DNA of 64,000 nucleotides from Stegostoma tigrinum. Its lineage: Eukaryota. The first letter of the stretch is position 1. Each line of letters begins with the position of its first letter. The notes under the pieces were generated by a model. It had not been told where the DNA came from. It ran no database searches and was given only the letters and a program-made list of their open reading frames with translations. Both the position numbers and the translations under genes were made by a program. The stretch is from positions 8,251,464 through 8,315,463 of the forward strand of contig NC_081400.1 of assembly GCF_030684315.1 (NCBI RefSeq), given 5' to 3'. Of this stretch, positions 30,946 to 54,511 are shown piece after piece.

Positions 30946-30990
30946 TCAGAACGTTGAATCTCCAGTAAATGCTAAATGAGCATACAGAGT
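30946..30990 (-). CDS. Non-rearranging VJ-C1 IgSF receptor, terminal exon with tyrosine motif
   Basis: Acceptor TATTTTTTTTTCCTCCATAG; phase 0, matching exon 5. Encodes TLYAHLAFTGDSTF* (TxYxxL). Confidence 0.74.
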   Translation of the reverse strand, partial: TLYAHLAFTGDSTF

Positions 30991-31177
30991 CTATGGAGGA
31001 AAAAAAAATACCATCAGCATCTCGTAAACCGAGCTGCAGTATGTGTTCTTTTGTCATTTCTGTTTGATATATCATTCAGTTAGATGATAACTAACATTTA
31101 TCTCCATATAACCGTAATGATTTCCACTTCAACGACCACCTCAACATTGAGTGGCTTATGGATCTCCACACTCTTAC

Positions 31178-31213
31178 ACTCTTCACCACTTTTCCCATTG
31201 GTACCCACTCCTT
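31178..31213 (-). CDS. Candidate optional 36-nt cytoplasmic exon of the VJ-C1 receptor
   Basis: Acceptor GTTTTTTTCTGCAG, donor AGT|GTAAGA; read in phase 0-0 it gives KEWVPMGKVVKS. Lies 187 nt upstream of the terminal exon. Frame and usage are not provable from sequence. Confidence 0.4.
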
Positions 31214-31579
31214 CTGCAGAAAAAAACAGCTTTTTGCTGTTTACTGATTATAAGTTACAGCCTCTACTATCCTCATAGTCAGTGTATTCCAGATTTCCTT
31301 TCCCTCAAATACTCTTGACAGCCTCTGTCATTCATCTTAAAATTAGGCCTATTGTTATTGATTCTTCAATTAAGGTAGGATGGCTGCCTCCTTTCCAATA
31401 TGACCGTGCTGCTCACTATCTTATGCACTTCAGTTAAGTCTCTGTTCAGCCTCCTCTACTCTAAAGGAAACGAGAGACTGTGCAATCTAACTTTATAGTG
31501 ATACTACTCCATCCCAGGTAACATGCTCGTGAATCTCCTCTGCACCCGCTTCAGTGCAACGACATTACTCGTGGAGAGC

Positions 31580-33960
31580 ACATTTAACCAGTTGGTTACA
31601 TCAGGTGAAGATTACACAGGCAGAAAGGGATGGGTGACTATCAAATAAATTAAGAGAATCAAGGAGGAAGTGTTGGAATCCATTGTGGCCATCACACTCT
31701 CAAACAGGAATACTACCATGGATACTTTGGGTGTTTGGCCTCTCAGGGGAAATTAGCAACAGTCACGTTTATACCAACAAGCAGAGTTCTACTGCACATA
31801 GGGGAAGGGAATGAGCAACAGGGTTTTAGTGGTTGGCTTCAATAGTAAGGGGTACAGACAGATGCTTCTGTGACTGTGGAGGTGAACTCAGCATGATATA
31901 TTTATTGTGTCCTGTTCTGGTCACCTCATTACAGGAAAGATGTGGAAGTATTAGAAAAGGTGCAGAGGAGATTTACCAGGATGTTGCCTGGAATGCATCG
32001 AAGGTCTTTCGAGGAAAGATTGAGTGGGAATGGCTTTTCTCTTCAAAATGATGAAGGATGAGAGGTGACTTGACAGAGGAGTACAAAATGATCAGAGGTA
32101 CAGATAGAGTTGACAGCCAGAGACTTTTTCCCAGGCTGGAGGTACCTATTACATGGGGTCATATTTTTAAAGTGAAAGGAAGTAGGTATTGGGGAGACGT
32201 CAGTGGTAGGTTCTTTACTCAGAGAGTGGTAGGGGTGTGGAATGCTTTGCCGGAGAGGGTAGTGGAGTCGGCCTCATAAGGTAGCGGTGGAGGTTAATTA
32301 GACCTGAGGTTTAGGGTAAAAGTTCGGCACAACATTGTGGGCCGAAGGGCCTGCACTGTTCTATGTTGTATATTTCCTGCCTGGTGCCAGGATCAAGTAT
32401 GTTCAGGAGTGGGATGTTGAGCAATCGGTGATCATGGTAAACATATATGCCAGTGACATAGGTAATCAACGATATGAGGACATGAAAACTGAATACAGGA
32501 AGTTAGAAGCAAAATGGAAATGCAGGACCTCAAAAAGACTAATTGCAGGATTACTGCCAATGCCACTTGCTCGTGAGTGTTGGGACAAGACAATATGTCA
32601 GGTGAATGCATGACTGAAGAAATTATGTGTCAGTCTGGGGCTTCAATTCTTGTGGCATTGGGACCATTTCTAGGGAAGGGGGGGGACCTGAGAAACCTGA
32701 CAGGCTGGTCAGAGCTGGGGCAAATAACCATGCAGGGCCTTTTGCTCGCTCCATCGGTGAGGTCTTAAGCTGGTGTGACAAAGTGTAGGATAACATTGGC
32801 CAGATACAGATCAGAAAATATGAGATAGGATGTTAGTTTGTGATGGAGCCAGCAATTTGGAATGACAAAGAAATAGAATTTAAAAAAGTGTTCAGCAAAG
32901 GAATTTGATAGGTTTCCGTTGTTTATTCTTCAATACGAAAGGTTTAACAAACAATGTAGATGAATTAATGGAACAGAAAGGCATATAGCAGCACAATGGC
33001 TTTGCTACATCGGAAAATTGAATAAAGAAATTGGCTACTCACTATCCCTGGATGTGGATTTTTCAGGCACAGTATAGTGGATTACTAAAAGCAGAGGGAA
33101 TGCAGCAATATTGGTTAAAGACCTAATGAATGGTATACCAAACAGATTAAGAAACAAGGCTTCAGAGATAGTAGGAACTGCGGGGTCTGAAGAAGGGTCT
33201 AGGCCTGAAACATCAGCCTTCCTGCTCCTCTGATGCTGCTCAGCCTGCAGTGTTCATCCATTTCTACACCTTGTTATTTTAGAAACAAAGCTTTTTGGGT
33301 TAGGTTTAGGAATATAAAGTGGGGGCAATAACACCGCTAGGAGTCTACTAGAGACTCTCAAATAGTGAGAGGGAGACAGATTAACCTGCATTTAGACAAA
33401 TTTCGGCTTGTACGAATAACAGAACAATAAAAGGAGGAGACATTTTTTAACTTCCCCAGTAGCAAACAGAGGTAAAACTATATATGGGACATGAAAGAAT
33501 CATGAAATGTGTCGAGGAAACTCTGAAAAAAAAACAGGCAGTACATGACCATACCAATGAAAAGAGACACAATTCTCAAGGTTTAGTCTTGGGAGATGAA
33601 AATGGGTCAGTGATTGACCATCTGACAGTTGGTGATCATATCGAAGATAGTGACCATAAGTCAGTTCAATTTTGTACTATTATGGAAAACGGCAGAATTA
33701 AATCAGGACTAAAAGTTTTAAACTGGTGGGAGGCAAGTTTTACTAATCTGAGAATTGATTTGGCTGCATTGGATCGTACAGGACTACTAAAGGATAAATC
33801 AGTGATGAACTGGTAGGAAGCACGAGTAAATGAGATCCTTTGGGCATAAAACAGACAGGTTCCCTCAAAAAATAAGCATGGTACTGCCAAATCTAGACCA
33901 TAATATTTGTCCATAAAAGTACTGGGGAAGATTAAGCAGAACAAAAACTTGTGACAGTCA
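31580..33960 (+). mobile_element. Degenerate CR1 ORF1 (esterase)/APE region with nested CR1 3' fragment (about 31890-32370) and Penelope mini-element (33163-33280)
   Basis: SIVRGTDRCFC, FLPGARIKYV, IAGLLPMP (CR1 ORF1 esterase); DSDHKSVQF, LNWWEASF (APE); MRGDLTEEYK…FFTQRVVGVWNALP. Confidence 0.8.
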
Positions 33961-34713
33961 CATAAAATGAAAAGGAAGTTGACACTGCAGATAACCTCCA
34001 ATAATATAGAAAGAATTGGGATCAAGTTGAAAAGAATGACAAGATGGAGGATGGGAAAAGATTTTGCCTGTAAGAGCGTGGCACCTTTCTTGAGATATCT
34101 TCAGTATTAGAGCTGATATGCATGAATTCTAGGAGCAGCAATTACTGTTCCATAGGTTGTTACGGTGTTTTAGAAAAGGAGGAAGGAAGACCAAGGCAGT
34201 GACCACATAGTGGCAACAGAATCAATGTAGAAAGAAAACTACGCTGCAGTCTGAGAAAACAAAGTGTGAAGCTGGATGAACACAGCAGGCCAAGCAGCAT
34301 CGTAGGAGCACAAAAGCTGACATTTCGGGTCGAGACTCTTCATCGGAGGATACTGCAGTCTGACTCAGCCATGACCATTTACAGCGACTGCCTCTACTGT
34401 ATGATTTCAAGGACCTCTGGGCCTCAGAGTTTGTCTAAGAAAAATAAACCAACAGCGAAATTCACAGCTGATCTTGTATAAACCTGTCAGGTGAGGTCAC
34501 TGCATGGGAGCACCTCAGTGGCTAGGTATCTTTTTGTGAATCTATAATAGAGTCAAGAGCATATTTTCTTTTGATTATACGTTTCTATTGAGATCTGACT
34601 CTTGATTAAACTTTAAAGTGATAAAACCTAGGTACTAAGTTAGTATAGAACAGTGTTTTTCGAACAGTAAGGCTGTGCTATTTTCTGATTCTGTACATTG
34701 TTGAGTTGCAAAG

Positions 34714-34915
34714 ATGGCCTTTCTTAGAGGGAAATGCTCTTTCTGTCGGATGTGGGCCATTAGGGAAAGTTTCCATGTTACTGACGATTATGCCTGCAGG
34801 AAGTGTGCTTGGTAGCGAATCCTAATGGATCATATAGGTTGATTGGAGCAGCACTAAGAGACTCTGATGAATTTACGGGAGCTAGTGGGTGTGGTGGATG
34901 GCCATTGAAGAACTG
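34714..34915 (+). mobile_element. CR1 ORF1 N-terminal zinc-finger fragment
   Basis: MAFLRGKCSFCRMWAIRESFHVTDDYACRKC (CxxC…CxxC). Confidence 0.7.
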
Positions 34916-34984
34916 AAGAATTGGCAATTAATGCTGGCCTTGCCAGTGATACCCACTTCCGGTAAATGAATTAGAAAAGATAAT

Positions 34985-36175
34985 TATAGAACATAGCACA
35001 AAGAACAGTACAGAGTAGTACAGCCCCTTCGGCCCATGATGCTGTGCCAACCTATTATCCTACACTAAGATCAAACTACCCTGCACACCCTGCATTTTAC
35101 TATCATCCATGTGCCTATCCAAGAGTCAGTTGAATGTCCCTAATGTATCCGACTCAATCGTCGCTGCCAGCAGTGCATTCCACGTCCCCAATATTCTCTG
35201 CATAAAGAACCTACCTCTGACATCTCCCCTATACCTTCTTACTATCACCTTAAAAGTATGCCCCCTCATAATAGTCATTTCAGCCCTGGGAAAAAGACTT
35301 TAGGTCTCCACTCTATTTACACCTCTCAATATCTTATACACTTCTATCAGATCACCTCTCATCCTTCTTCACTCCAATGAGAAAAGACCTAGCTCCCTCA
35401 ACCTTTCCTCATAAGCCCTGCCCTCCAGTCCAGGCAGCATTCTGATAAATCTCCTCTGCACCTTCTGTACAGCTTCCACATCCTGCCTATAATGAGGCGA
35501 CCAGAACTGAACACAATATTCCAAGTGTGGGCTAACCAGAGCTGCAGCATAACCTTGCAGCCCTTAAACTCAGTTGCCCTGCCAATGAAAGCCAATACAT
35601 CATTCGCCTTCTTAACAATGCTAACTACTTGCGCAGGGTCTATGGACGAGGACCTGAGGTCTCTCTGTTCATCCACACTTCCAAGAATCCTGCCATTAAC
35701 CATGTATTTAGCATCAAATTTGACTTTCCAAAACAAATCATTTCACACTTTTCCGGGCTGAATTCCATTTGCCACTTCTTTGTCCGGCTCTGCATCGTGT
35801 CAGTGTCACGCTGCAAACTTAAAAAGCCCTCCATACTATTCACAACTACCACCAACCTTCGCGTCACTGGCAAATGTACCTAGCAACCTTTCAATTTCCT
35901 CATCCAAACCATTTATGATGATCACAAAGAGCAGTGGTCCCAGAATAGATCCCTGCAGAAAGCCACTAGTCACTGAGCTCCAAGCTGAATTCTTTCCATC
36001 TACTAACAGCCTCTGCCTTCTATTGGATAGGCAATTCTGTATCCAGACAGCCAAATTTCCCTGAACCTCATGCCGCCTTACTTTCTGAAAGAGCTTACCG
36101 TGGAGAACCTTATCAAATGCCTTGCTAAAATCCACATACACCTCATGTACTGCTCAACCTTCATCAATGTGTTTT
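34985..36175 (-). mobile_element. CR1-type LINE RT and 3' end
   Basis: YVDFSKAFDKVLHG, VTSGFLQGSILGPLLF, FASDAKVGG, WQMEFSPEKCE. Confidence 0.92.
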
Positions 36176-36697
36176 GTAATTATGGAACGTCATCTTCATT
36201 GGCTGATTTGTAGAATAGAAATTTTTGGAGAAAATGGTGATACTGTATAAGATATTTGTCACCACATTCCAAGAAAGACATAATTGCTTTGGAAATAATG
36301 CAGAGAAAATTTACGAGAATTTTGCCAGGACTTGAGAATTGTCATCATGAGGAAAGGTTCGGGTTATTCTGCCTTGGAACAGAGAATACTGATGGATGAC
36401 CTGATTAATGTATACACAGTTGTGAGAGGATCAAATGCAGCAGATAGGAGGAAACTGTTTATCTTGGCAGGGAGTTCAAAAACCAGGTTTCATAAATTTG
36501 AGACAAATTGCAGAAGGACTAGATTGGATATGAGCAAAAATGTTTATGAAGAGGTTAGTGCTTGACTGCAGTTCACTGTCTGAGTATACACGCTAAAGTC
36601 ATTTTGGAAGTACCTGGATCTGGACTTTAAGTTCTGTAAGTTGCAGGACTGTGCGCCATGTGCAGGAAACTGCAAATAGAAATTGTGTCTGGGTATC

Positions 36698-38324
36698 AGA
36701 GATAATGGGAACTGCAGATGCTGGAGAATTCCAAGATAATAAAATGTGAGGCTGGATGAACACAGCAGGCCAAGCAGCACCTCAGGAGCACAAAAGCTGA
36801 CGTTTCGGGCCTAGACCCTTCATCAGAGAGGGGGATGGGGAGAGCGAACTGGAATAAATAGGGAGAGAGGGGGAGGCGGACCGAAGATGGAGAGTAAAGA
36901 AGATAGGTGGAGAGAGTATAGGTCGGGAGGTAGGGAGGGGATAGGTCAGTCCAGGGAAGACGGACAGGTCAAGGAGGTGGGATGAGGTTAGTAGGTAGAT
37001 GGGGGTGCGGCTTGGGGTGGGAGGAAGGGATGGGTGAGAGGAAGAACCAGTTAGGGAGGCAGAGACAGGTTGGACTGGTTTTGGGATGCAGTGGGTGGGG
37101 GGGAAGAGCTGGGCTGGTTGTGTGGTGCAGTGGGGGGAGGGGACGAACTGGGCTGGTTTAGGGATGCAGTAGGGGAAGGGGAGATTTTGAAACTGGTGAA
37201 GTCCACATTGATACCATTAGGCTGCAGGGTTCCCAGGCGGAATATGAGTTGCTGTTCCTGCAACCTTCGGGTGGCATCATTGCGGCAGTGCAGGAGGCCC
37301 ATGATGGACATGTCATCTAGAGAATGGGAGGGGGAGTGGAAATGGTTTGCGACTGGGAGGTGCAGTTGTTTGTTGCGAACTGAGCGGAGGTGTTCTGCAA
37401 AGCGGTCTCCAAGCCTCCGCTTGGTTTCCCCAATGTAGAGGAAGCCGCACCGGGTACAATGGATGCAGTATGCCACATTGGCAGATGTGCAGGTGAACCT
37501 CTGCTTAATGTGGAATGTCATCTTGGGGCCTGGGATAGGGGTGAGGGAGGAGGTGTGGGGGCAAGTGTAGCATTTCCTGAGGTTGCAGGGGAAGGTGCCG
37601 GGTGTGGTGGGGTTGGAGGGCAGTGTGGAGCGAACAAGGGAGTCACGGAGAGAGTGGTCTCTCTGGAAAGCAGACAGGGGTGGGGATGGAAAAATGTCTT
37701 GGGTGGTGGGGTCGGATTGTAAATGGCGAAAGTGTCGGAGAATGATGCGTTGTATCCGGAGGTTGGAAGGGTGGTGTGTGAGAACGAGGGGGATCCTCTT
37801 AGGGCGGTTGTGGCGGGGGCGGGGTGTGAGGGATGTGTTGCGGGAAATGTGGACTTCACCAGTTTCAAAATCTCCCCTTCCCCTACTGCGTCCCTAAACC
37901 AGCCCAGTTCGTCCCCTCCCCCCACTGCACTACACAACCAGCCCAGCTCTTCCCCCCCACCCACTGCATCCCAAAACCAGTCCAACCTGTCTCTGCCTCC
38001 CTAACCAGTTCTTCCTCTCACCCAACCCTTCCTCCCACCCCAAGCTGCACCCCCATCTACCTACTAACCTCATCCCACCTCCTTGACCTGTCCATCTTCC
38101 CTGGACTGACCTATCCCCTTCTTACCTCCCGACCTATACTCTCTCCACCTATCTTCTTTACTCTCCATCTTCGGTCCACCTCCCCCTCTCTCCCTATTTA
38201 TTCCAGTTCCCTCTCCCCATCCCCCTCTCTGATGAAGGGTCTAGGCCCGAAACGTCAGCTTTTGTGCTCCTGAGATGCTGCTTGGCCTGCTGTGTTCATC
38301 CAGCCTCACATTTTATTATCTTAG
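36698..38324 (-). mobile_element. Young Penelope-like element (GIY-YIG end) with 477-bp inverted arms and 14-bp TSD
   Basis: ORF 37051-37521: FTCTSANVAYCIHCTRCGFLYIGETKRRLGDRFAEHLRSV…GTLQPNGINV. Arms 36733-37209 and 37846-38322 are near-perfect reverse complements. TSD TGTGTCTGGGTATC at 36684-36697 and 38325-38338, interrupting an older CR1 3' end. Confidence 0.93.
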
Positions 38325-39198
38325 TGTGTCTGGGTATCTTTGGTTTGGTATGGACAAGATGAATTGAATGGCCCCCTTCAGCGCTGTATCATTTCTTTAG
38401 TTCTATGGTTCCTAGAAAGAGATGAGCAGAATGACACATGGCAGTCCAGTTGTGACCTAAACAAAGTTTTGCGCAGCTCCCACATAACTTCACTGCTGTT
38501 ATAATCTATGCAATGACTGAAAATGTTTAGTGTCCCATATGTCTTCTGAACTACCATGTTAATTTGGCCTGGAGCATTCGAGAATCTGCAGACAAGGAAT
38601 CCAAGTTTCTTCTGAATTTTGAGCTTCCTATTATCCTAATTTTTGGTGAAGATTGCTCTTGTTTTTAACTTCTTTAAAAGTGCATCACCTCATTCTGTTC
38701 TTCAGGATTAAATTCCATCTGGTAATCATCTGCCCGTCTGACAAACCCTTGTCTATCTCACCCTAATCTGAAATGTTTTTTTCTGAATATGAAAATACCG
38801 GTCAAAATTCGTGCCATCCATAAACTTATTTTTTCATTCCATCTCTAATTTCTCACTAGTTTGCACCTTCATTTTTTTTTATGATGAGGGATTATCTTCA
38901 AACCTGCATCATCTGTTCTTGGAATATAACCATTAAAAACCTGTTGTCCTTGAATGGAACATTCCTTCTGAATGTATGTGTAATTAAATTCATTTAATCA
39001 GCTTCATTCAGTATCCATGTGTATACTTTCAACAGCTTTAGTTTCTTCGAAAATGTTAAACAATGCCATTTAGCATTGTTCTCACTGAAACCTTTAGAAT
39101 AATTGTTTCATGCTGGTCATCATTCTCAAACATTCATTTCTGAAGCTAGGGTAATTAAAGTGCAGTTTTAGAAAAAATTAAAATCTTCCTGCATTTAC

Positions 39199-39254
39199 CT
39201 CCTGATTTGAATCACGTGGTCTGGCATCTGTGAATGAATCCTTCTCCCACTTGC
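39199..39254 (-). CDS. Non-rearranging VJ-C1 IgSF receptor, exon 5 (cytoplasmic)
   Basis: Strong acceptor GCTAATTTTCTTTCTTTATTTCAG, donor GAG|GTAAAT, 56 nt, phase 1 to 0. Encodes the hydrophilic (G)KWEKDSFTDARPRDSNQE. Confidence 0.76.
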
Positions 39255-39479
39255 CTGAAATAAAGAAAGAAAATTAGCTTTTAAATATTGTAAAAACTAC
39301 TCTTTCTCATTTTGGTGATCCTATGGCTTTAGGAGGCATGTACTTTTTGAATACAGGTTTTGAGGCAGAGATTCCAGCTGTTTATTAACAACTTATGATT
39401 AGTTTCTAAGTCTTAGCGTTTTCTCTAAAGTTGGAACAGCAGACAAATCTTGAATATGTGCGGTCAAGCACCCACAGAA

Positions 39480-39930
39480 CAAAGGGATTAGTTTTAGATT
39501 CCAACAGTTGTTGCTGGTGTCTGTGCAGGATTGGAACCAGCAGCACATCTCTCCCTGCTGCACTCTCAGAGTTTTCCCTTGATGAGCTTTAAGCCTGGAG
39601 TTGCATGTGAGACAGCCTGTCTTCTTTTTCAGAATTTACCTTTGTGAAGGGTGTGTTTGTGGGGTGTCACTACATTAGAAAAGTAAATTAGTAACAGTTA
39701 CCATTTCGAGTATTTTGTTAGGTATTTCGATAATGTTACAACTTTTTTTGTTGTTACAATCGTTTTGTTTTCTTTCGTTTTACCTACAGTGTACGAATAA
39801 CGTCCTTTAGGCATTAACTGGAGTATTACAAACAATTGAATTGCATCTGGATCGCAACACCTTGCATTTACCTTTAGATGAAGAGAAAGGTCGGGTCGAG
39901 GGTATTTTCTTTATATATTTTGAAGGGGTT
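39480..39930 (+). mobile_element. Solo/partial Gypsy LTR
   Basis: Shares the LTR core seen at 25.2, 26.7 and 28.2 kb (aatttacctttgtgaagggtgtgtttgt…). Confidence 0.55.
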
Positions 39931-39949
39931 TGCTCGAGGCCAAGACAGT

Positions 39950-41852: not shown

Positions 41853-42034
41853 TACATCTGGAATAGGTCCATCTTGTGCCTGGGCCTCCTAGTCCAAGGG
41901 TAAGGACATTACCTCTGCACCACAAAATGACATGCGTGCTTCAGCTAATTAACTCAAAACATCGAAGAACATACTGACTCTGTACCCGGGGTATATGGCA
42001 TGATGTAGTTCCAGCAACAATGGACATATCCTAC

Positions 42035-42145
42035 CTGAAACACATTTGCTGTAAATCCAAATTGTGACAGCTAACATCGTGAGAGGGAGCAGTATCATCA
42101 ATGAACACCAATAATACATGAGCTGGCAATGGGTCCACCATGGCT
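42035..42145 (-). CDS. Non-rearranging VJ-C1 IgSF receptor, exon 4 (stalk and transmembrane)
   Basis: Acceptor TATCTCTGTCTTCTTCAG, donor TCAG|GTAGGA, 111 nt, phase 1-1. EPWWTHCQ-LMYYWCSLMILLPLTMLAVTIWIY-SKCVS: a 24-aa hydrophobic span preceded by a Cys. Confidence 0.82.
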
Positions 42146-43194: not shown

Positions 43195-43440
43195 GATCAA
43201 CAAAACAGCTCAGTGAGCCAACCTCAACACCCATATCTTGCGCTCCAGATCTACTCCAAAACTTTCGAGACCTACGGGAGTAACACGTTTGAACTGACCA
43301 GGAAATGAGAAAACTATGGCAAATGAGAGAGCACAAATCGTGAACAACTCTACTTCCTTGCAGAACAACAAGACAGCTCGGCCAGCCAACCAACCTCAAC
43401 ACCTACAACCCAAGCTACAGATCTACTCCAAAACTTTCGA
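43195..43440 (+). repeat. Direct repeat of a Penelope-type terminal segment (related copy at about 42690-42800)
   Basis: acagctc…agccaacc…caacacc…cagatctactccaaaactttcga at 43201-43268 and 43369-43440. Confidence 0.6.
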
Positions 43441-43899
43441 CACATTAACACACCTATAATTATGGAAATGTTCTTCTTCTTCTTCGCTACTGAACGATAT
43501 ATTTCAGAAATATAATTTGATCAAGGAAATTAAGGAGGATGCACTGAATCTTTTTTTTTCACTTTGAGGGCAGAAGAAGAGTGAATTTTCACCACTGTTT
43601 AAAAAAAAGGTCATATCGTTTATTAACCATATTAAATGCAAGTGAACTAAAGTCCCACATTCAAATTCACATTAATTCAAAGAAATGAACTTATGGAGTT
43701 AGCCAAGAGAATATTGATTCGATCAAACTCTGATTACGAAGAATAGAAATGCTCTGAAAGTGCCAAGTGGATATTTAAGCTAGGCAGATTGTGCAAAAAA
43801 TATTTCTTTCGATGAGACCAGATTACAATGTTTGAAACAATGAAAATGATTGAAAAATCTAGGCTTTTTTAGTCCCACTAGCAATGGGTAAAAATGGTG

Positions 43900-44980: not shown

Positions 44981-45249
44981 AATGGCATCACTCCCACATC
45001 AGAACTGGGATATGAGTCGATAATTTCTATTCAGTTTGTGCTAGCATTTGGAAATACTTACGCTAAAGATGATCTAATGTGTTGGAGATCAGTAGGAATC
45101 GAGTATCTTTAGTGCATTTGGGAGCACAAAATATGTGGATGTAGGTATGTGATGATGGCATTACCAAAACATTGTTGGGGCGATATTTGTGTGGAATAGG
45201 AATAATGACTTATCTATTGTGTCTAATCGTCTGTTTCCAGAGTGAGACT

Positions 45250-45336
45250 TTTATTTTAGAAATGCAGGTGGAGATTTGTGTGCATTAAATGGGAAAGCAG
45301 CAAATTGGAAATGCAGCTGTATTTTCCAATTTTATT
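45250..45336 (-). promoter_or_regulatory. Two candidate intronic polyadenylation signals after the C exon
   Basis: AATAAA on the - strand at 45336-45331 and 45255-45250, about 200 and 280 nt after the read-through stop at 45533. Confidence 0.35.
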
Positions 45337-45543
45337 CAGTGAAAGCATAGAGTTCTTTCTTAGACATTAATATGCATAAATGGCCTGATCAAATGGACTG
45401 AAATTATCATTCATACAGTTAAATAGTGTAGCATTGAGGAAGGAAATCTGTAAAAGTCCAGATAATCAGAAGCGGATACGAAAAAGGAGCAACATTTTAC
45501 TAGTTATGCATCAAGCATTCGCCTCACCTATGTCAACATTTAC

Positions 45544-45846
45544 CTCTGTGATAGGAGATAACTTCGCTGGCAAGAATTTCTGTTGAAGTGATTTGAACTG
45601 AGCAAGTGCAGGAAGCGACTTGTTTCCATGTTTCTGTTGGGACTCTGAAGTGACTTATGATAGCGAATCCTCCAGCAGAGACGATTGTCCCAGAATGTGT
45701 CCAATGCTTGCCATCCCAAGTGGAAATATTCCAGCCGATGGGAATTGAATCAGAAAGCACGTTGTTTACTAAGCACACCAATGTGTTAGCCTCCATATGA
45801 AACATTTCATCCAGCGGTAGTGATAAGAGAAAGATGGCTGGGGGTT
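45544..45846 (-). CDS. Non-rearranging VJ-C1 IgSF receptor, exon 3 (C1-type constant domain)
   Basis: Acceptor ...CAACAG| at 45847, donor AGAG|GTAAAT, 303 nt, phase 1-1. Translates EPPAIFLLSLPLDEMFHMEANTLVCLV...IGWNIS...SHFRVPTETWKQVASCTCSVQ...SYHR, with C1-set motifs P-x-I-F-L, TLVCLV, W, and W-x5-CTC-x-V. The 5' boundary is less certain because a LINE tail lies about 15 nt upstream. Confidence 0.88.
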
Positions 45847-45862
45847 CTGTTGTGTTGGAGAA

Positions 45863-46700
45863 GCATCACAGAATCACAAAATTGCTATAATGCCGAACTG
45901 GACTGACTGGCCTATTGTGCTGCATAAGCTCTTCAAATGAGCATAATAATGTAGCTGTACACTCCTATTTTTATTTTTCTGCGTGCCTTTGGCACACCAT
46001 TTCCATCAAAAAGATCATCTGATGTTCCTGGAAATGCCTCAATTGAATTTGCCTCTCCCACATTTTTAGCCAGTGCATTCAATAGCCTAAATACTGTGTG
46101 AAATAAAGTTTAATTATCACAACACTCTTGTTTCTTTTGAAATCATACGCGATAGTCTATGTTCCTTTTATGAGTGGGAAAAAGATTCTCCCATCTACTC
46201 TACCAAGCTGCTCTTGATTTTGAAAACCTCAATCAAGTCTTCTCTCATCCTTTTTTCTCCAAGGAGAACGGTCCAAATTCCTTCTTTTTATCAACATAAT
46301 TGAAGTTTCTCATTTCTGGAAGCATTCTTGCAAATCATTTCTGCCCTATCTCCAGTGCATTCTATACTTTCCTATAATGTGACACTTATAATGTTACAAA
46401 ATGCTGATACATTACCTTGGTCTTGCGTCCTTTGCTCCAATGAATAAAATGAAAGATTACTGTATTCTTCATGAACTGTTCTGTCTGCCCAGGTCCTGAC
46501 ACCTTCAATGATGTGTGCATATACACACTTAGGATCTCCTGTCCCTGCACCCACTTTAGTATTGTACTGTTTATTTTCTTTCTTGCATTTCAGTGTTTTT
46601 CCAACCAAAGTGACTTAACTCACACTTCTGTGCATTGAATTCTCTATGTCGTCTATATGCTCATTCCAACACCTGGTCGATGTCCTTTTGTTGTCATCCT
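45863..46700 (-). mobile_element. CR1-type LINE 3' fragment ending next to the C-exon acceptor
   Basis: Reverse complement of the ORF2 C-terminus; tail ATTTTGTG-ATTCTGTG-AT ends about 15 nt before the AG at 45848-45847. Confidence 0.75.
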
Positions 46701-47221
46701 TACAGCTTACAATTCCTTCTGATCCCTTGTAGTGACAGAACTTGCTGCTCTATCACTATGGCCCACGACAACATCCTCCTCTTCTGCAAAGTTATAATGT
46801 GTTCATTTATGCTCTATGTCAATGTGTAAACCAATTTTGTGGGTTTGAATCGATGCTACTCATCCATTAACAATTCTAATATGTTGTATGTGCCTATAGG
46901 TGACTTTGGGATTCCCTCTTCTACTTTCTAGTATTTTCTTGTCATTACTTTCGGCTTATTTTGTTTGCTTTGCCAACTCCCCGCTAAAACTGCAGTATTG
47001 CACTTGGTTCTTACTTTTAATTCCACCTCATAACCTGTAATGAGCACAACATTCTTCTATCTAAAATAAATTTCCATCTCCTTTACCATCCAGGGAGCTC
47101 ATATCGTCTCATTAAAAAATGCATTGACTGTGCCTGGTCTATCACTGTTTCAAAGGAGGCAAAGCACTGTCGTAGATAAAGGAGTAGTTGTATGGCAGAA
47201 GGCAGAGAAGAAGGATAAACA

Positions 47222-48680
47222 AATAATGGGAACTGCAGATGCTGGAGAATCCAAGATTACAAAGTGTGGGGCTGGATGAACACAGCAGGCCAAGCAGCAT
47301 CTTAGGAGCACAAAAACTAAAGTTTCGGACCTAGACCCTTCATCAGAAAAGGGACGGGGGAGAGGGTTCTGAAATAAATAGGGAGAGAGGGGGAGGCGGA
47401 TCTAAGATGGATAGAGGAGAAGATAGGTGGAGAGGAGACAGACAAGTTAAAGAGGCGGGGATGGAGCCTGTAGAGGTCAGTGTAAGTGGAGAGGTCGGAA
47501 GAGGATAAGTCAGTCCGGGGAGGACGGACAGGTCAAGGGGGCAGGATGAGGTTAGTAGGTAGGACATGGGGGTGTGGCTTGACATGGGAGGAGGGGATAA
47601 GTGAGAGGAAGAACAGGTTAGGGAGGCGGGGACGAGCTGGGTTGGTTTTGGGATGCAGTAGGGGGAGAACTGATTTTGAAGCTTGTGAAATCAATATTGA
47701 TACCATTGGGCTTCAGGGTTCCTGAGTGGAATATGAGTTGCTGCAGAGGAGGCCTGCTGCCATCTGCAATCCGACCCCACCACCAAAGGCAATTTTCCAT
47801 CCCCACTCCTGTCTGCTTTCTGGATGGACCACTCTCTCTGTGACTCCCTTGTCTGCTCCACACTCCCCTCCAACCACACTACACCCGGCACTTTCCCCTG
47901 CAACTGCAGGAATTGCTACATTTGCCCCCCATACCTCCTCCCTCACCCCCATCCCAGATCCCAAGAAGACTTTCCATATCGAGCAGATGTTCACCTGCAC
48001 ATCTGCCAATGTGGTATACTGCATCCGCTGCACCCATTGTGGCTTCCTCTACATCGCGGAAACCAAGCGGAGGCTTGGGGACAACTTTGCAGAACACCTC
48101 AGCTCGGTTCGCAATAAACAACTGCACCACCCATTCACGAACCATTTTAACACCCTCTCCCATTCCTCAGACGACATGTCCATCATGGGCCTCCTGCAGT
48201 GCCACAATGATGCCAGCCGAACGTTGCAGGAACAGCAACTCATATTCCGCCTGGGAACCCTGCAGCCCAATGGTATCAATATGTATTTCACAAGCTTCAA
48301 TATCTTGCCTCCACCACCTGCACAACTACTGCATCCCAAAACCAACCCAGCTCATCCCGTCTCCTTAACCTGTTCTGCCTCTCACCCATCCCTTCCTCCC
48401 ACTTCAAACCGCACCCCCATGTGCTACCTACTAACCTCATCCCACCCCCTTGACCTATCCATCCTCCCCGACTGACCTATCCCCTCCCTACCTCCCCATC
48501 TACACTCACATCTACTGGCTCCATCCCTGCCCCTTTAACTTGTCTGTCTCCTCTCCACCTATTTTCCCCTCTAACCATCTTCAATCTTCCTCCCCCTCTC
48601 CCGATTTATTTCAGAACCCTCTCCCCCTCACCCTTTACTGATGAAGGGTCTAGGCCCGAAACATCAGCTTTTGTGCTCCG
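47222..48680 (+). mobile_element. Penelope-like element (GIY-YIG end) with inverted arms
   Basis: ORF 47726-48475 includes FTCTSANVVYCIRCTHCGFLYIAETKRRLGDNFAEHL…GTLQPNGIN. 47222-47750 is an inverted, more diverged copy of the 3' portion. Confidence 0.9.
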
Positions 48681-48964
48681 AGTGAGGATAAAGACCTCTT
48701 TTTCAGGTTGGCAGCTGGTAACTAGCGGAGTTCTAGAGGCAGCTGTGTGGAACCACAGCTATTCAAGTTATACAATAACTGTCTGGTTAATAGAACAAAG
48801 ACAAGCGAACGTACCAGTAGTGTTGAGGAAGCAGCGAGTTTTTCAAAGGATTTTGAACATTCTAGGCAATTGTGCCAAGGAGCAGCAGTATCAATAGAAT
48901 GTGGGAAAATGTGAGTTTGACCACTATGGGAGGAATGTCACAGGCGTGACAGACTATTTTCTAA

Positions 48965-51900
48965 GGAGCTGACGATTAAAGGACAAGCTTAAATGTTCTG
49001 TGCCTTATTGCACAGACCATGCAATAAAATGTGTGAATTAATCATGCAGATAGATGTAAAAGTACAATACAATTGGGATTTCAGAGACCCGATTGCAGGG
49101 TGACCAAGGATGGGACCTGAAAATCCCAGAATATTCAGTCTTTAGGAAGTACAGGCAAAAAGAGAATGGTGTTGGAGTGGCAGTGCTGGTTATATATGAA
49201 TTTAACACTACAGAGAGAAAGGATATCAGCTCTGAAAATGTGGAGTCTGGATGGGTAGAGTTGGGAAGTACCGAAGTGGAAAAAAAAACAGCAGCAGGTA
49301 TCATACATATATGCCCTAAACTGCAGTGGTGATGGTGAGGATGGCATTAAACAGGAAAATAGAGGTGCATGCGATAAGGAAATATGGATGATCATGGGTG
49401 ATTTTATTCTGCACATAAATTGGACAAATCAAATTAGCCACAATGCCACAGATGTAGAATTCCTGAAAAGTGTACAGGATGGTTTTCTTGACCAATATGT
49501 CGACGAACCAACTGGACAAAAGGTCATTTTGGATTGGGTGTTGTGCAACGGAAAGGGAATCATTGCCAATCTAGCTGTTTGGAACACCAACGAGAAGAGC
49601 GACCAAAAAAAAAGATAGAATTATTTATCAAGACGGAGAGTGGGGTTTCTGATTTGCACACTTGGGTGCTGTACCTAAATAAGGAAACTACATGGATATG
49701 AGGTTTGGTTTGGCTTTGATGGATAAGGGAGAGTTACGTCAAAGGATGCCAGTGGATAGACAATGGCAAGCTTTCATGGAATGCATGGGGCAAACTGCAA
49801 CAACTATTTATTCCTGTCTGTGACAAAAGCAAAATGGGTAAGTGGGCCAATCCATGGCTTACAAAGGAAATAAGAGATACTTTCTGATCCAAGGAAGAAG
49901 CATGCCGATTGTCCAAGAAAAATAATAGATCTTAGGATTGGGAGCAGTTTAGGATTTGGCAAAAAGAAATCAAGGGATTGATTACGGGGGAAAATAGAGT
50001 AGGAAAGTAAGCTTGCAGGAAACATAAAGACTGACACTTAGAGTTTCTATAGGTACATGAAAAGAAAGCGATTAATAATGACAAATATAGGTCCCCTACA
50101 GACAGAAATGGGGTAATATATAAAAGGGGATAAAGAAATGGCTGAGGAACTGAATACATATGTTGATTATGTCTTCACGAAAGAGGATACAAATGAAATG
50201 CCAGAATTGTTCGAGGATGCAAGATTTAGTGAGAGGGAATAACTGAGAGAGATCAATATTGCAGAAATAATACAGGGAAAATTGTTGGGATTTAAGGCTA
50301 ATAAATCCCCAGGGATTTGATAGTCTACATCCAGAGTATTTAAGGAAGTAGCTCTAGAAATTGTTGCTGCATTGGTGGTCATCTTCCAGGATTCCATTGA
50401 CCCCGCAGATTGGAGGGTGGCTGATACCACTCCAATATTCAAAAAGGAAGGTAGGGAGAAAATAGGGAATTATAGACCAGTAAGTCTAACATCGACAGTG
50501 GAAAAATTATTGTTTCTATTTTGAAAGATTTTTTAGCTGAGCATTTAGAAAACAATGGCAGGATCAGATCGAGTTGGCATGCATTTACGAAGGGGAAATC
50601 ATTTTTGACAAATCTGTTGGAATTCTACAAAAATGTAACTCATAGAGTTGACAAGGGGAGCCAGTCGAATTAGTACATTTGGACTTTCAGAAAGTGTTTG
50701 ACAAAGTCCCACCTAAGAGATCGACATGTAAAAATAGAATACATGGGAATGGGGGATATTGAGACGGTTAGTAAACTGGTTGACAAAGAGGAAACAAAGT
50801 ATAGAATTAATGGGTCCTTTTCAAATTGCCAGGGAATAACTAATGGGGTCACAGCGATTGGTGCTTGAATACCAGCTATTCACAATGTATATTGAAAATT
50901 TGGATGATGAAACAAAATGTAACATCTCCAAGTTTGCAGATGACACCAAGTTGGGTGGGAGGGTGAACTGGAACGAGGATGCAGAGATCCTTCAGCATGA
51001 TCCCGACAGGTTAGGTGAGTGGGAAACTTGTTGACGGATGCAGCATAATTTGGATGTATGTGAGCTTATTTACATCAGGAGCAGAAACAAGAAGGCAGGT
51101 TACTACTTGAATGGCTGTAAATTTGGAGAGGGGAGTGTGCAGCAGGACAGTTTGCATGTAAGCAGACAGATGCAGTAGCTGGCAAAGAAGGCAAATGGTA
51201 TGTTGGCCTTCATTGCGAGAGGTTTCGAGTACAGGATCAGGGATGTGTTTTGGCAGTTGTACAGAGCCTTGATGAAATCACACTGAAATATTGTGAGCAG
51301 TTTTAATGTCATTTTTCTGTGGAAGCATGCTCTTGTTCTCAAGGGACTGCAGCAAATGTTTACCAGACTGATTCTGGAGAAGGTGCGTTTGACATAAACA
51401 GAGAGATTGATTAGGTTGGGATTGTTTTCACCACAATTCACGTGAATGAGGGGCGACCTCATACAGACTTAGAAAATCAAGGGGTACGGGAAGAGAGCAG
51501 GAGGACGGGGCAGAGGAACTTATCAGCTATGATTGACTGGCAGCGCAGTCTTGGTGGGCCGAATGGCCTAATTTATGTCTTATGGTGTTAAAATCCTAAC
51601 AGGGCTGGACAGGGTAAATGCAAGGAGAATTGTGGCTGTGTCCAGAAACAAGGGTCACAGTATGAGGATTTGGTAGATGATTTATTACATAGAATTCTTA
51701 CAGTGTTGGAAACAGGGCCTTCAGCCCAACGAGTCCACACCGACCCACAGAGCATCCCAACCCAGACCAATCCCCCTATAACCCACCTCATCTACACATC
51801 CCTGGACACTACAGGGCAATTTAGCATAGCCAAACCACCTAACTTGTACATCCTTGGACTGTGGGAGGAAACCAGAGCACCTGGAGGAAACCACGCAGAC

Positions 51901-52270
51901 ACAGGAAGAATGGGCAAATGCCACACAGACAGTCGCCCAAGGGTAGAATCGAACCCATGTCCCTGGTGCTGTTAGGCATCAGTGCTAACCCCTGAGCCAC
52001 CATGATTTAGGATGAAGATGAAGAGACATTTCTTCACGAAAGAGTGGTGAGGGTGTGGAATTGATTACCGCAGGAATTAGTCGATGCCAAATTATTGAAT
52101 GTATTCAAGAGACGACGAGATATAGCACTTGAGACCAAAGGATCAAAGGATATGGGGAGAAATCAGCATTAGGCTATTGAGTTGGATGATCAGCCATGAT
52201 CGTGAAGAATGGCAGGGCAGGCTTGAAGGGCCAAATGGCCACACCCTACTCCTATATTCTATGTTTCTAA
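48965..52270 (+). mobile_element. Long CR1-type LINE (APE and RT, disrupted) nested in an older CR1 fragment; contains an HE1 SINE (51687-52003, -) and a short foreign tail (51479-51589)
   Basis: WDLKIPEYSVFRK, IMGDFILHINW, NYRPVSLTS, ISKFADDTKLGG, 3' tail ttctatgtttct. The host fragments at 48680-48964 and 52271-52500 rejoin at tttctaa. Confidence 0.9.
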
Positions 52271-53690
52271 ATGGAATAGGCTTTAGAAATCTGATGTGCA
52301 AAGAGACTTAGGAGTCCTAGTTCAGAATTCTCTCAAGATTTACATCCGGGTAATTTGATAGTTAAGAAGACAAATGCAATGTTGCCATTCATTTCAAGAA
52401 AACTAGAATACAATAGCAAAAATGTGCTGACTATGGACAGACCTCATTTTGGATATTGTGAGCAGTATTTTGCCTTGTGTGTGAGGAACGATGAATGATT
52501 TTGCTTCAGTATCTTATAGTCTTATTGTTCTCCTTTTTTTCCCTTCCACCAACCTTTGTTTTCCAGTCAATTTTGCACAACTTTTTTCCCCATTTCAATG
52601 TCTACTTCTTCACTGATTTTACTTGTTTCATTTTACCAAACTCTTATAATGCACATACCATTGAGTACTAAATGTTTGCTCAACGGCAATTGATCCACTT
52701 TTCCCACCTCATTTCCAAGGACCACATTCAATTATTATTCATTTTCTGTTTTTTATTTGAACAAACACTTTTTTAGGAAACTGTCATGAATACATTATAG
52801 AAACCCCTGTTTCTCGTTGTCCCATACATGACCAGTGACCCAGTTTATGTTTGGCTCACAAATGCCTTCCATTATAACCATTCTAAAATGTTGGTATTTT
52901 CCTGGAAATTTCCTGCAGATTTGCTCTTCTAAATCTTCTCCTCGAGGTGATTATATCTGTGCTTCACTAATCAATGTACATGTTCCAATAATATTCCTTA
53001 GCTCAAAGTCAGTTATTGACCACCCTGAAAAACACTGAAATACCATCCTTAACATATAGTTCTACTCTCCCCCTCCTGTCGTACATTTCTAACCTTTGTT
53101 TTTGAAGAATATATATCCAGGAATATTTAAAACCAAGTCTTTCCCTCTTTTAGCCAGTTTTCTATCATTGTCACAGCATTGTATTTCTATATGGCACCAT
53201 GTCTGTAGCTACTGAATCGTATTTCCTATATGCCAAGGATATTAGGTCTATATTAGATTTCATTTCTTTCTCCCTATCTCTGCCCTCAGCTATTATCTTG
53301 TTATTCTCTTTATAGTGCCATCTGTAACCTGAAGTAAAGTGGACCCGAGAATTCTCTACGATTATTCGCTTTTGTTTCCCACATCGCTTCCAATTTAGGT
53401 TAAATCCCTCTCAGTAACAGAAGCACAACATTTCATAAGGAAATTCGCTCCACCTCTATTCAAACACAGTCATCCCTTGTACAAAATCTATCAACTCTGC
53501 ATAAGTCTCAGTGTTCCAGGAATCTAAAGTCCTGCTCTATCTGTGCTACTAGCATGATAATCCTTCGTGTCCTAATTGTAAATTCACTAACACACAGCAT
53601 TGGCAGTGATGTGGAGACTACCAGAGGTAACACAAAATCACAGTTCCAACTTCCTGGTAATTTATGATGAAATGAGTGAAACAGTCTTAC

Positions 53691-54029
53691 CTGTTATAAA
53701 CAACTTTGATCCATTTCCCACTTTGTAGGGCTCTCCATAAAGTTCTCTGGCTGCACAGAAATAGTGACCTGAATCATTTCTCTGGACATCCCGAATGACA
53801 AGGGTATAAATAGTTGAGTCGTCGTTAATTTTTCCAGAAAATCTTCTATCAGGAACAAAGTGCTTGTGCACAATGTAAACAAGTTGCAGATGTTCTTGTA
53901 GCTGTTGTTTATACCAGTGAACACCTCCACTTGTGTAACAACTAGTGTAGCAATTCAGCATTACTGTGCTTCCAATGGAAACTGTTTGTACTGGAGGAGT
54001 CTGTGGGAGAGTTTTCTGAACAGCAGTAA
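53691..54029 (-). CDS. Non-rearranging VJ-C1 IgSF receptor, exon 2 (germline-joined VJ domain)
   Basis: Acceptor TGTTCTGTTTTATTAG, donor ACAG|GTAAG, 339 nt, phase 1-1. V-set hallmarks: B-strand Cys (VMLNC), WYKQ, RFSG, YTLVIRDVQRNDSGHYFC, and a J-like G strand YKVGNGSKLFIT in the same exon. Confidence 0.92.
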
Positions 54030-54468
54030 CTAATAAAACAGAACACGTCACAAGTAATACAGACTTTGCAAAAATGGAATGAATCAAGGGAAACCTGGGT
54101 GGGATGAAGGGAGAAAGGAGGAGAGTAACTAAACTCATATTTGTATGAATCTAGGAAAACTGGTTGACAATTTCGCTCAATGGAAGATTCTGAAAACAAC
54201 AATTGCATAATAAACATATAATCTATATTCATCATTTCGGTAAAGAGATGTGTATTAGTCTAGAATGCTATGTAGATTCATCAGTGTATTTGTTTTTCTT
54301 CATCCCAATAGTATCAAAGAGATGTGGATGGTTGGTTAATTTTACACCATTTCAGATAATACAGTTCCTCAATATGTTAAAGTTAAAGACACTTTGTGTT
54401 CCACTAGTTGAAACTACCCATTTACTTTACTCTGCAAGTAGTCTGGAATAAAAGCATAAAAATCTAAC

Positions 54469-54511
54469 CTGGCATCAGACTGAAAAGTGTACCGATACAG
54501 AAGATATTCAT
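54469..54511 (-). CDS. Non-rearranging VJ-C1 IgSF receptor, exon 1 (split leader)
   Basis: AAAACA-ATG context; MNIFCIGTLFSLMP, then phase-1 donor CCAG|GTTAGA. Splicing to the V exon completes the signal peptide MNIFCIGTLFSLMPVTAV-QKTL, a split-leader arrangement as in Ig/TCR V genes (439-nt intron). Confidence 0.78.

What the first reader, a model, noticed from the sequence alone, without database searches (positions are those of the whole stretch)
30946..54511. Complete non-rearranging, antigen-receptor-like VJ-C1 membrane receptor with an inhibitory-type tail
Seen: six exons (43+339+303+111+56+45 = 897 nt) spread over 23.5 kb of repeats splice in frame with canonical GT-AG sites. They give a 298-aa protein: leader / VJ / C1 / stalk-Cys-TM / cytoplasmic tail ending ...NQE-TLYAHLAFTGDSTF. 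Known: VJ plus C1 is the architecture of TCR chains and Ig light chains, which normally need RAG rearrangement and have no signalling tail. A few non-rearranging VJ-C1 genes (shark UrIg, avian PRARP, Xenopus VJC1 genes) are discussed as relatives of the pre-RAG ancestor. Inference: this is an invariant receptor with a TCR-like ectodomain and an NK-receptor-like tail, probably auto-annotated as 'Ig light chain-like' and not characterised. Whether it belongs to a described family cannot be decided here.
Basis: partly seen in the sequence, partly recalled or inferred. Interest (0 to 1): 0.9.

Follow-up and report, generated by a model that had tools for sequence, protein, structure and literature searches.

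The report
Shark germline VJ-C1 inhibitory-type receptor gene
This is an intact zebra-shark gene for a membrane receptor with an antibody-light-chain-like outer part that needs no gene rearrangement and a short tail with one conserved tyrosine motif; it is one of a large, unnamed family found from sharks to birds.

Summary
On the minus strand, six exons (54511-54469, 54029-53691, 45846-45544, 42145-42035, 39254-39199, 30990-30946) have canonical splice sites. Checked exon by exon, they give letter for letter the 298-aa RefSeq protein 'uncharacterized protein LOC125449850' of Stegostoma tigrinum.

The layout is split leader, one-exon V with a J-like motif, one C1-set domain, stalk cysteine, uncharged membrane span, and a 39-aa tail ending in TLYAHL.

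It is not a lone oddity. It belongs to a clustered multigene family in sharks and rays, with full-length collinear relatives in coelacanth, lungfish, frogs, turtles, crocodilians, lizards and birds (profile-profile E 1e-52). All are auto-named 'Ig light/heavy chain-like', 'TCR-like' or 'uncharacterized'.

Family C1 domains group apart from teleost light-chain, IgH-like and UrIg2-like C domains (93/68). The tail tyrosine, stalk cysteine and uncharged span are conserved family-wide.

The best reading is a non-rearranging, probably dimeric, inhibitory-type receptor. Expression of this gene and its signalling remain untested: only genomic DNA runs were found.

The tetrapod branch may be the published PRARP family, but this rests on memory and could not be checked. 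First readers of this scan noted at least five similar genes elsewhere in this genome.

The parts
54469..54511 (-). Exon 1: start codon and first 14 residues of the split leader (43 nt, ends in phase 1, GT donor)
   Evidence: equals P0098 residues 1-14.
53691..54029 (-). Exon 2: end of the leader plus a complete V domain with the J-like strand fused in the germline (339 nt). Cys41 is at 53950-53952 and Cys106 at 53755-53757.
   Evidence: V-set E 6e-16; best solved relatives are kappa V domains; P0098 residues 16-127.
53692..53721 (-). J-like motif VGNGSKLFIT (the family consensus is FGNGSKL), followed directly by the GT donor; no break between V and J
   Evidence: F118V is one of only three departures from conserved family columns.
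45544..45846 (-). Exon 3: one C1-set Ig domain (303 nt). Cys152 is at 45773-45775 and Cys209 at 45602-45604.
   Evidence: (C1-set 31 bits).
42035..42145 (-). Exon 4: stalk with conserved Cys235 (42126-42128) and an uncharged membrane span, about residues 237-260 (42051-42122)
   Evidence: no K/R/D/E in the span; helix 232-266; C235 invariant in 17 elasmobranch members.
39199..39254 (-). Exon 5: membrane-proximal part of the tail (56 nt), ...KWEKDSFTDARPRDSNQE
   Evidence: A homologous piece is present in the Chiloscyllium punctatum model P0001.
30946..30990 (-). Exon 6: TLYAHLAFTGDSTF plus stop. The tyrosine motif TLYAHL lies at 30973-30990.
   Evidence: Y287, A288 and L290 invariant in elasmobranch subfamily 1.
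29473..29923 (-). Candidate polyadenylation signals (AATAAA starting at 29918 and 29473), 1.0 and 1.5 kb after the stop
   Evidence: position only, not shown to be used.

Best explanation
This is an intact protein-coding gene of the zebra shark (RefSeq LOC125449850). It encodes a type I membrane receptor of the immunoglobulin superfamily. Shown here: a split leader; a V domain whose J-like strand is already fused in the germline, so no RAG rearrangement is needed or possible; one C1-set domain; a stalk cysteine; an uncharged membrane span; and a 39-residue tail with one tyrosine motif (E-T-L-Y-A-H-L) near the C terminus. Also shown: it belongs to a clustered multigene family of elasmobranchs with full-length relatives in lobe-finned fishes and tetrapods. 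Among shark paralogues the CDR-like loops vary most, while the framework, stalk cysteine and tail motif are nearly invariant. Inferred: the V domain binds an unknown ligand through its CDR-like loops, and different paralogues bind different ligands. Inferred: the chain pairs through C1 and the stalk cysteine into a disulfide-linked homodimer or a heterodimer with a paralogue. Inferred: after ligand binding a Src-family kinase phosphorylates Tyr287, which fits the ITIM/ITSM pattern and recruits SH2 phosphatases (SHP-1/SHP-2) that dampen activation of the cell. The family is thus a germline-encoded, antigen-receptor-shaped inhibitory receptor set, working like SIRP-alpha, inhibitory NITRs or KIRs.
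For: Gene structure and identity with P0098. Domains. Fold: the AlphaFold model has V at 28-127, C1 at 131-225 and a helix at 232-266, with mean pLDDT 75.5. The best structural matches are Fab kappa light chains and a TCR chain over about 220 columns. Family: 36 and 119 relatives, with several members per scaffold in Stegostoma, Rhincodon, Heterodontus, Cetorhinus, Mobula and Hypanus. The elasmobranch profile matches the tetrapod profile with probability 100, E 1e-52, over 290 columns from leader to tail motif. No decay: only 3 of 51 conserved family columns are changed in this gene, against a family range of 0-11. Motif conservation: nearly all of the roughly 55 members inspected have an uncharged span, a stalk Cys and a single [T/S/I]xYAxL near the C terminus; none has an ITAM or a mid-span charge. 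Y287, A288, L290 and C235 are invariant in 17 elasmobranch members. A family member is transcribed and spliced in the predicted way: a 1540-nt Logan contig encodes the complete 309-aa little-skate-type protein. That the pattern (S/I/V/L)xYxx(I/V/L) or TxYxx(V/I) binds SHP-1/2 or SAP is established knowledge of ITIM/ITSM receptors, not a result obtained here.
Against: There is no RNA evidence for this gene. The only public runs holding exon 3 are genomic DNA of one sample, with contigs that cover the introns. Thr at -2 with Leu at +3 fits neither the strict ITIM nor the strict ITSM consensus exactly. YAHL is also a YxxΦ sorting signal. A single tyrosine is weaker than the tandem motifs of SIRP-alpha or PD-1. 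The J-strand Phe is Val here, and the C1 branch of this gene is long (0.42 against a median of about 0.1). No clear whale-shark orthologue was sampled. The homodimer test gave no verdict. The conserved N-G-S sequon inside the J strand could, if glycosylated, hinder antigen-receptor-like V-V pairing (inference from the sequence).
Confidence: 0.6

Rival explanations
1. The receptor is real, but the conserved tyrosine motif is mainly a YxxΦ sorting or endocytosis signal (YAHL binding AP-2). The protein would then be an uptake or trafficking receptor, not an inhibitory signalling one.
For: YA[HRDQ]L fits YxxΦ. The motif sits in a short tail, and conservation extends beyond the ITIM core (E at -3, A at +1, F at +5). 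That extent could reflect another binding partner.
Against: The residue at -2 is kept as T/S/I across more than 50 members. ITIM/ITSM requires that position and YxxΦ does not. Turtle, alligator and gecko relatives have a textbook ITSM, TEYAAV / TDYAEV, and frogs have IQYAQL.
Confidence: 0.15
2. The gene is intact in sequence but silent or decaying: a recently dead member of a fast-turnover multigene family that the annotation pipeline predicted by homology.
For: No RNA run was found. It has a long terminal branch in the C1 tree, F118V in the J motif, L249P in the membrane span, and very long repeat-filled introns.
Against: There is an open frame through six exons with all splice sites canonical. 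Only 3 of 51 conserved columns are changed, fewer than in half of the other members. The V exon and tail exon 5 are also kept in the Chiloscyllium punctatum counterpart P0001 (72% identity in V).
Confidence: 0.1
3. The single tyrosine acts as a switch or activating/co-stimulatory motif (SAP/EAT-2 or other SH2 adaptors, as in SLAM-family ITSMs), so the receptor tunes or activates and does not inhibit.
For: Thr at -2 is the ITSM hallmark, and the tetrapod relatives have TxYxxV.
Against: Leu at +3 in nearly all elasmobranch members is the ITIM preference. No second motif, no charged span and no ITAM occur anywhere in the family.
Confidence: 0.1
4. It is a conventional shark light-chain cluster that was joined in the germline, and the downstream TM and tail exons are a false gene model. 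The real product would be the secreted read-through form ending ...HRGKC.
For: Germline-joined light-chain clusters exist in cartilaginous fish (established knowledge). The V domain is most like kappa V. Read-through of the exon 3 donor gives G-K-C-stop (scan note s1-881565).
Against: The TM and tail exons are homologous, collinear and conserved in dozens of species. A skate transcript contig carries all parts. The family C1 groups apart from teleost IgL C domains (family 93/68, IgL 100/98). The C1 shares under 30% identity with any solved Ig or TCR constant domain.
Confidence: 0.03

Closest known systems
[quoted passage not shown] 2019, J Immunol 202:1992, cited in PMC10751288 and PMC11599192)
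   Same: Non-rearranging V domain with a joined J-like strand, a membrane span and a potential ITIM. The original report gave orthologues in bony fish, amphibians, reptiles and birds, and disulfide-linked dimers (from my memory of the abstract). The tetrapod branch found here has this layout and may be the same family.
   Different: The paper is not held here, no protein in my searches carries the name, and no chicken sequence was recovered, so identity is untested. As I recall, cartilaginous fish were not covered, chicken PRARP was described with a single V domain, and the second domain of other species was called C2. The shark genes have a clear C1-set domain.
UrIg and UrIg2 of elasmobranchs (PMC12227049)
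   Same: Non-rearranging, single-exon VJ domain with the split leader, followed by C1-type domains, in sharks. They too were auto-annotated as light chains.
   Different: UrIg has three C domains and is secreted. UrIg2 has nine to eleven C domains. This gene has one C1, a short tail with a tyrosine motif, and many paralogues. The V and C domains of the multi-C1 proteins that I take for UrIg/UrIg2-like (P0005, P0002 and others) group apart from this family (V clade 98*; C1).
SIRP-alpha (SHPS-1)
   Same: A germline V domain with a J-like strand, C1-set domains, an uncharged span and tyrosine motifs that recruit SHP-1/2 (established knowledge). This is the best-studied receptor that works as I propose. 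A SIRP cluster is among the nearest language-model neighbours, and one turtle relative is auto-named SIRP-like.
   Different: SIRP-alpha has two C1 domains, a long tail with four tyrosines and no stalk cysteine, and has charged-span partners (SIRP-beta). No SIRP chain was among the best solved-structure matches.
Ig light chains and TCR chains
   Same: The V-J plus single C1 ectodomain; the best sequence and fold matches are kappa light chains. The stalk cysteine sits where TCR chains carry their interchain cysteine.
   Different: V and J are one exon with no place for recombination signals. The span has no basic residue for CD3-type partners. The tail is 39 residues with a tyrosine motif. The product is not secreted in the main model. 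The C1 domain groups apart from teleost IgL.
NITRs of bony fish
   Same: A multigene, clustered family with germline V domains carrying J-like motifs, mostly inhibitory with an ITIM (PMC2442602).
   Different: NITRs have V alone or V plus an I-type domain, never C1, and include activating members with a charged span. No such members were seen here.

Membership tests
Unnamed pan-gnathostome VJ-C1-TM-tyrosine-motif family (auto-named 'Ig light/heavy chain-like') | Collinear homology over the full length: leader, VJ, C1, stalk Cys, span and tail motif | tested here: met
   P0098 aligns end to end with the family. All family-invariant residues are present (C41, W53, D100, G102, Y104, C106, C152, W166, C209, C235, Y287, A288, L290).
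Unnamed pan-gnathostome VJ-C1-TM-tyrosine-motif family (auto-named 'Ig light/heavy chain-like') | The C1 domain groups with the family and not with IgL, IgH-like or UrIg2-like C domains | tested here: met
   55 family C1 domains form one side of a branch (UFBoot 93 / SH-aLRT 68; 96% of bootstrap trees). This gene lies inside an 18-row galeomorph shark set (100/97). TCR and shark IgL C domains were not in the set.
Conventional Ig light chain (including germline-joined shark clusters) | Secreted V-J-C chain without membrane and cytoplasmic exons; C domain of a light-chain isotype | tested here: not met
   TM and tail exons are present and conserved. The C1 lies apart from teleost IgL. Shark IgL isotypes themselves were not available for the tree.
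T cell receptor chain | Separate V, (D) and J segments with recombination signals; basic residue in the span; tail of a few residues | tested here: not met
   V and J are one uninterrupted exon ending at a splice donor. There is no K/R/D/E in the span and the tail is 39 aa.
UrIg / UrIg2 | Single-exon VJ followed by three (UrIg) or nine to eleven (UrIg2) C1-type domains (PMC12227049) | tested here: not met
   There is one C1 exon only, and no other C1 in the window. V and C lie apart from the multi-C1 proteins; their identity as UrIg/UrIg2 is inferred from architecture only.
PRARP | Joined VJ V-set domain, membrane span, potential ITIM, dimer formation; sequence orthology with the chicken genes | not testable with these tools
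Bird relatives found (P0190, P0195, P0196) lack a recognisable tail motif in their models.
ITIM/ITSM-bearing inhibitory receptor (functional class) | Cytoplasmic (S/I/V/L)xYxx(I/V/L) or TxYxx(V/I), uncharged span | tested here: inconclusive
   TLYAHL has T at -2 (ITSM-like) and L at +3 (ITIM-like). The span is uncharged and the motif is conserved. Phosphorylation and phosphatase binding are not testable here.
SIRP family | V plus two C1 domains, long tail with four tyrosines | tested here: not met
   One C1 only and one tyrosine motif.

The most novel reading that the evidence does not exclude
The elasmobranch genes and their tetrapod relatives form one ancient family, present in the last common ancestor of jawed vertebrates. 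It would be a family of membrane-bound, single-C1, non-rearranging VJ receptors that has never been described as such for cartilaginous fish. It would be the closest living model, in domain layout (one V-J, one C1, stalk Cys, span), of the chain that the RAG transposon invaded. It would also show that this layout was first used by germline-diversified inhibitory receptors that pair like antigen-receptor chains.
Probability: 0.3. Interest if true: 0.75.

Novelty: new member of a known kind. Interest (0 to 1): 0.5.

Why it matters
Non-rearranging genes with an antigen-receptor-like V-J plus C1 layout are sought as relics of the precursor that the RAG transposon split about 500 million years ago. 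In sharks only UrIg and UrIg2 have been described, both with many C domains. This gene shows that sharks also carry a whole cluster of single-C1, membrane-bound versions with a conserved inhibitory-type tail, hidden under misleading automatic names such as 'kappa light chain-like' or 'TCR alpha chain-like'. The same layout persists in lungfish, frogs, turtles, crocodilians, lizards and birds. That gives a concrete, testable set of genes for three questions: what antigen-receptor-shaped molecules did before or beside rearrangement, whether they pair like Ig and TCR chains, and what they bind. It also warns that annotated 'light chain-like' genes in non-mammalian genomes are not all light chains.

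Tried and rejected
1. RNA support: the look-up of sequencing runs on exon 3 returned four runs of one sample. Their contigs cover introns at 100% identity, so they are genomic DNA, and no junction could be tested. The only splice-like joints listed are repeat artefacts.
I therefore had no orthologous DNA, no dN/dS and no synteny beyond the window.
3. Homodimer prediction (residues 16-236, two copies): no verdict, score 0.02. This counts neither for nor against binding.
4. Literature: searches for UrIg, PRARP, VJ-C1, 'nonrearranging' and related terms found no description of this shark family. Fu 2019, Ohta 2019 and Flajnik 2023 are not held.
5. The full-length family profile against solved structures is swamped by antibodies and does not discriminate. 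No UrIg2 or SIRP chain appeared among the best 60.
6. V-domain tree: deep branches are unresolved, and the teleost IgL V domains fall in a polytomy with the family's branches. The V domain alone therefore cannot be said to lie outside the light-chain V radiation.
7. Naming the non-family C1 hits by cluster look-up gave only 'uncharacterized' or 'hypothetical'.
8. There is no Ig octamer or TATA box within 790 bp upstream of the ATG.
9. The joined spliced sequence was never built for or sent to a search. Exons were searched by reference, and full-length work used the identical database protein P0098.

Full report
WHAT IS THERE

The gene lies on the minus strand. Reading the sequence and translating each exon by reference gives six exons:
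- Exon 1, 54511-54469: ATG plus 14 leader codons and one base.
- Exon 2, 54029-53691: the last leader residues and a full V domain that runs straight through a J-like strand, ...YFCAARELYGEPYKVGNGSKLFIT, into a GT donor.
- Exon 3, 45846-45544: a C1-type domain.
- Exon 4, 42145-42035: ...PWWTHCQ, then a hydrophobic span.
- Exon 5, 39254-39199.
- Exon 6, 30990-30946: TLYAHLAFTGDSTF and the stop.

All internal boundaries are AG/GT with pyrimidine tracts. The introns are 439, 7844, 3398, 2780 and 8208 bp. They carry decayed retroelement pieces (RVT_1 E 3e-11).

A family search returned the database protein P0098 (298 aa), which RefSeq calls 'uncharacterized protein LOC125449850 [Stegostoma tigrinum]'. 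An exon-by-exon comparison, including the four split codons, shows that it equals the six-exon model at every residue.

DOMAINS AND FOLD

Pfam scores exon 2 as V-set (E 6e-16) and exon 3 as C1-set (31 bits, cut-off 21). Among solved structures the V exon is most like kappa V domains. The C1 exon matches constant domains of many Ig classes only weakly, under 30% identity, with no preference for one class.

An AlphaFold model built on 42 family members (mean pLDDT 75.5) has two beta-sandwich domains (28-127 and 131-225), a helix at 232-266 and a disordered tail. Foldseek's best matches are Fab kappa light chains and a TCR chain over about 220 columns at 22-24% identity.

The membrane span has no charged residue. 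The tail has 39 residues, one motif TLYAHL and no ITAM. Three N-glycosylation sequons are visible in the sequence and conserved in the family consensus: N99 in ..RNDSG.., N120 inside the J strand (GNGS) and N167 in WNIS.

THE FAMILY

An exhaustive HMMER search with the C1 exon found no close copy, but it did find a set of roughly 300-aa proteins with the same layout. Word-indexed profile searches then gave 36 and 119 relatives. They occur in sharks (Stegostoma, Rhincodon, Hemiscyllium, Chiloscyllium, Scyliorhinus, Mustelus, Cetorhinus, Heterodontus, Pristiophorus). They occur in rays and skates (Mobula, Hypanus, Hemitrygon, Pristis, Leucoraja, Amblyraja, Rhinoraja). They also occur in coelacanth, lungfish, frogs, many turtles, alligators, lizards and several birds.

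Their source names are a random mix: 'immunoglobulin kappa / lambda-1 light chain-like', 'gamma-1 / alpha-2 heavy chain-like', 'Ig heavy chain Mem5-like', 'T cell receptor alpha/beta chain MC.7.G5-like', 'lachesin-like' and 'uncharacterized'. This is the mark of an uncurated family.

Several members share one scaffold in each of Stegostoma (three on a 9.69-Mb scaffold: P0094, P0098, P0102), Rhincodon, Heterodontus, Cetorhinus, Mobula and Hypanus, so the genes are clustered. First readers of this scan noted at least five further VJ-C1-TM-motif genes in this genome, one about 159 kb beyond this window. I did not examine those.

A profile of 17 elasmobranch members matches a profile of 10 tetrapod members with probability 100 and E 1e-52. 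The match runs over 290 columns, from signal peptide to tail motif (ETLYAxLAF against PQTEYAAV).

TREES

A careful maximum-likelihood tree used 77 C1 domains. The 55 family domains form one side of a branch (ultrafast bootstrap 93, SH-aLRT 68; 96% of bootstrap trees). Teleost light-chain C domains form their own group (100/98). The C domains of a platypus IgH-like protein and of two multi-C1 elasmobranch proteins also lie outside.

I take those two multi-C1 proteins for UrIg2-like because one has a V plus nine C1 domains, as described for nurse shark UrIg2 in PMC12227049. This gene sits inside a galeomorph shark set (100/97), on a rather long branch (0.42).

In the V tree its partner is the Chiloscyllium punctatum fragment P0001 (96*, 72% identity). 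That fragment also carries a homologue of tail exon 5, so a bamboo-shark counterpart exists. The deep V relations are unresolved, and UrIg2-like V domains are apart (98*).

There are limits. No TCR constant domains and no shark light-chain isotypes were available as vetted sequences. It fails to refute for IgL of bony fish, IgH-like and UrIg2-like domains, and it is open for TCR and shark IgL.

IS IT ALIVE?

In an alignment of 22 shark members, this gene departs from only 3 of 51 columns that are at least 90% conserved in the others (F118V, G128E, L249P). The family range is 0-11.

Variability among paralogues peaks in the three CDR-like loops (about residues 44-50, 69-75 and 108-116) and is lowest in framework 3. 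In the tail E284, Y287, A288 and L290 are almost invariant.

A 1540-nt Logan contig encodes a complete 309-aa protein of the little-skate cluster. A contig that short can only be a spliced transcript, so the family is transcribed with all its parts in at least one species.

For this gene itself I could get no RNA evidence. The four runs that hold exon 3 are genomic DNA of one sample.

HOW IT PROBABLY WORKS

Shown: the layout, the conservation pattern, and the absence of charged-span or ITAM-bearing members.

Inferred from what is known of ITIM/ITSM receptors such as SIRP-alpha, KIR, PD-1 and NITR:
- The V domain binds a ligand through its variable loops.
- The chain pairs through C1 and the invariant stalk cysteine.
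- Tyr287 is phosphorylated on engagement and recruits SHP-1/SHP-2.
- The outcome is inhibition.

I put this at about 0.6. The main rivals are a sorting-signal role of YAHL (0.15), a silent or dying copy (0.1), a switch or activating ITSM role (0.1) and a mis-modelled germline-joined light chain (0.03).

Nothing shows that this form is used.

COMPARISON WITH WHAT IS KNOWN

It is not a light chain, TCR chain, UrIg, UrIg2, SIRP or NITR (see the membership table). The closest described kind is the set of non-rearranging IgSF genes with joined VJ domains that specialists list together: CD79, NITR, SIRP, CD8, NKp30 and PRARP (PMC11599192).

PRARP (Fu et al. 2019) is, from my memory of its abstract, a VJ-type receptor with a potential ITIM. 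It forms disulfide-linked dimers and has orthologues in bony fish, amphibians, reptiles and birds. The tetrapod branch found here may well be that family.

Within the held literature I found no description of the elasmobranch genes. That is a limited library and no proof of absence.

VERDICT

This is a real, intact, already annotated but unnamed gene.

It is one ordinary member of a large, old and largely uncharacterised family, not a unique relic. I rate it a new member of a known kind, of moderate interest (0.5). The value lies in the family as a whole.

Noticed in passing
window 12274-13206 (+): An uninterrupted 310-codon frame scores as a rhodopsin-family 7TM receptor (Pfam 7tm_1, E 1.9e-21). 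Its best solved relative is GPR139 (E 4e-12). It looks like an intact single-exon GPCR gene about 18 kb beyond the 3' end of the receptor gene.
   Followed up: partly
window 45500-45546 (-): Reading through the exon 3 donor continues the frame as G-K-C-stop, which would give a secreted V-C1 chain ending in a cysteine (scan note s1-881565). The sequence is as described; there is no evidence that this form is made. A C. plagiosum relative has an annotated isoform (P0007) that skips the membrane exon.
   Followed up: partly
window 37051-37985 (-) and 47618-48475 (+): There are two inverted copies of a repeat with a GIY-YIG-like frame (Pfam E 0.002, under the cut-off), probably Penelope-like elements. 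They lie in introns 5 and 2, next to proline-rich low-complexity frames.
   Followed up: no
family level (P0036, P0040, P0044, P0118, P0119, P0136, P0139 and others): Elasmobranchs have a second, distinct subfamily with the same layout but a different V (YYCADKDGY...) and the tail motif ILYASLEF. It forms its own starred clade in both trees. A sturgeon protein (P0031) has one V and two family-type C1 domains.
   Followed up: partly
family level, turtles: Turtles carry a marked expansion of the tetrapod branch: many paralogues per scaffold in Pelodiscus, Mauremys, Chelonia, Gopherus and Pangshura, with a textbook ITSM (TEYAAV) in the tail.
   Followed up: no
P0098 residues 99, 120, 167 (window 53776-53778, 53713-53715, 45728-45730, minus strand): There are three N-x-S sequons conserved in the family consensus, one of them inside the J-strand bulge (GNGS). 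A glycan there could interfere with antigen-receptor-like V-V pairing.
   Followed up: no
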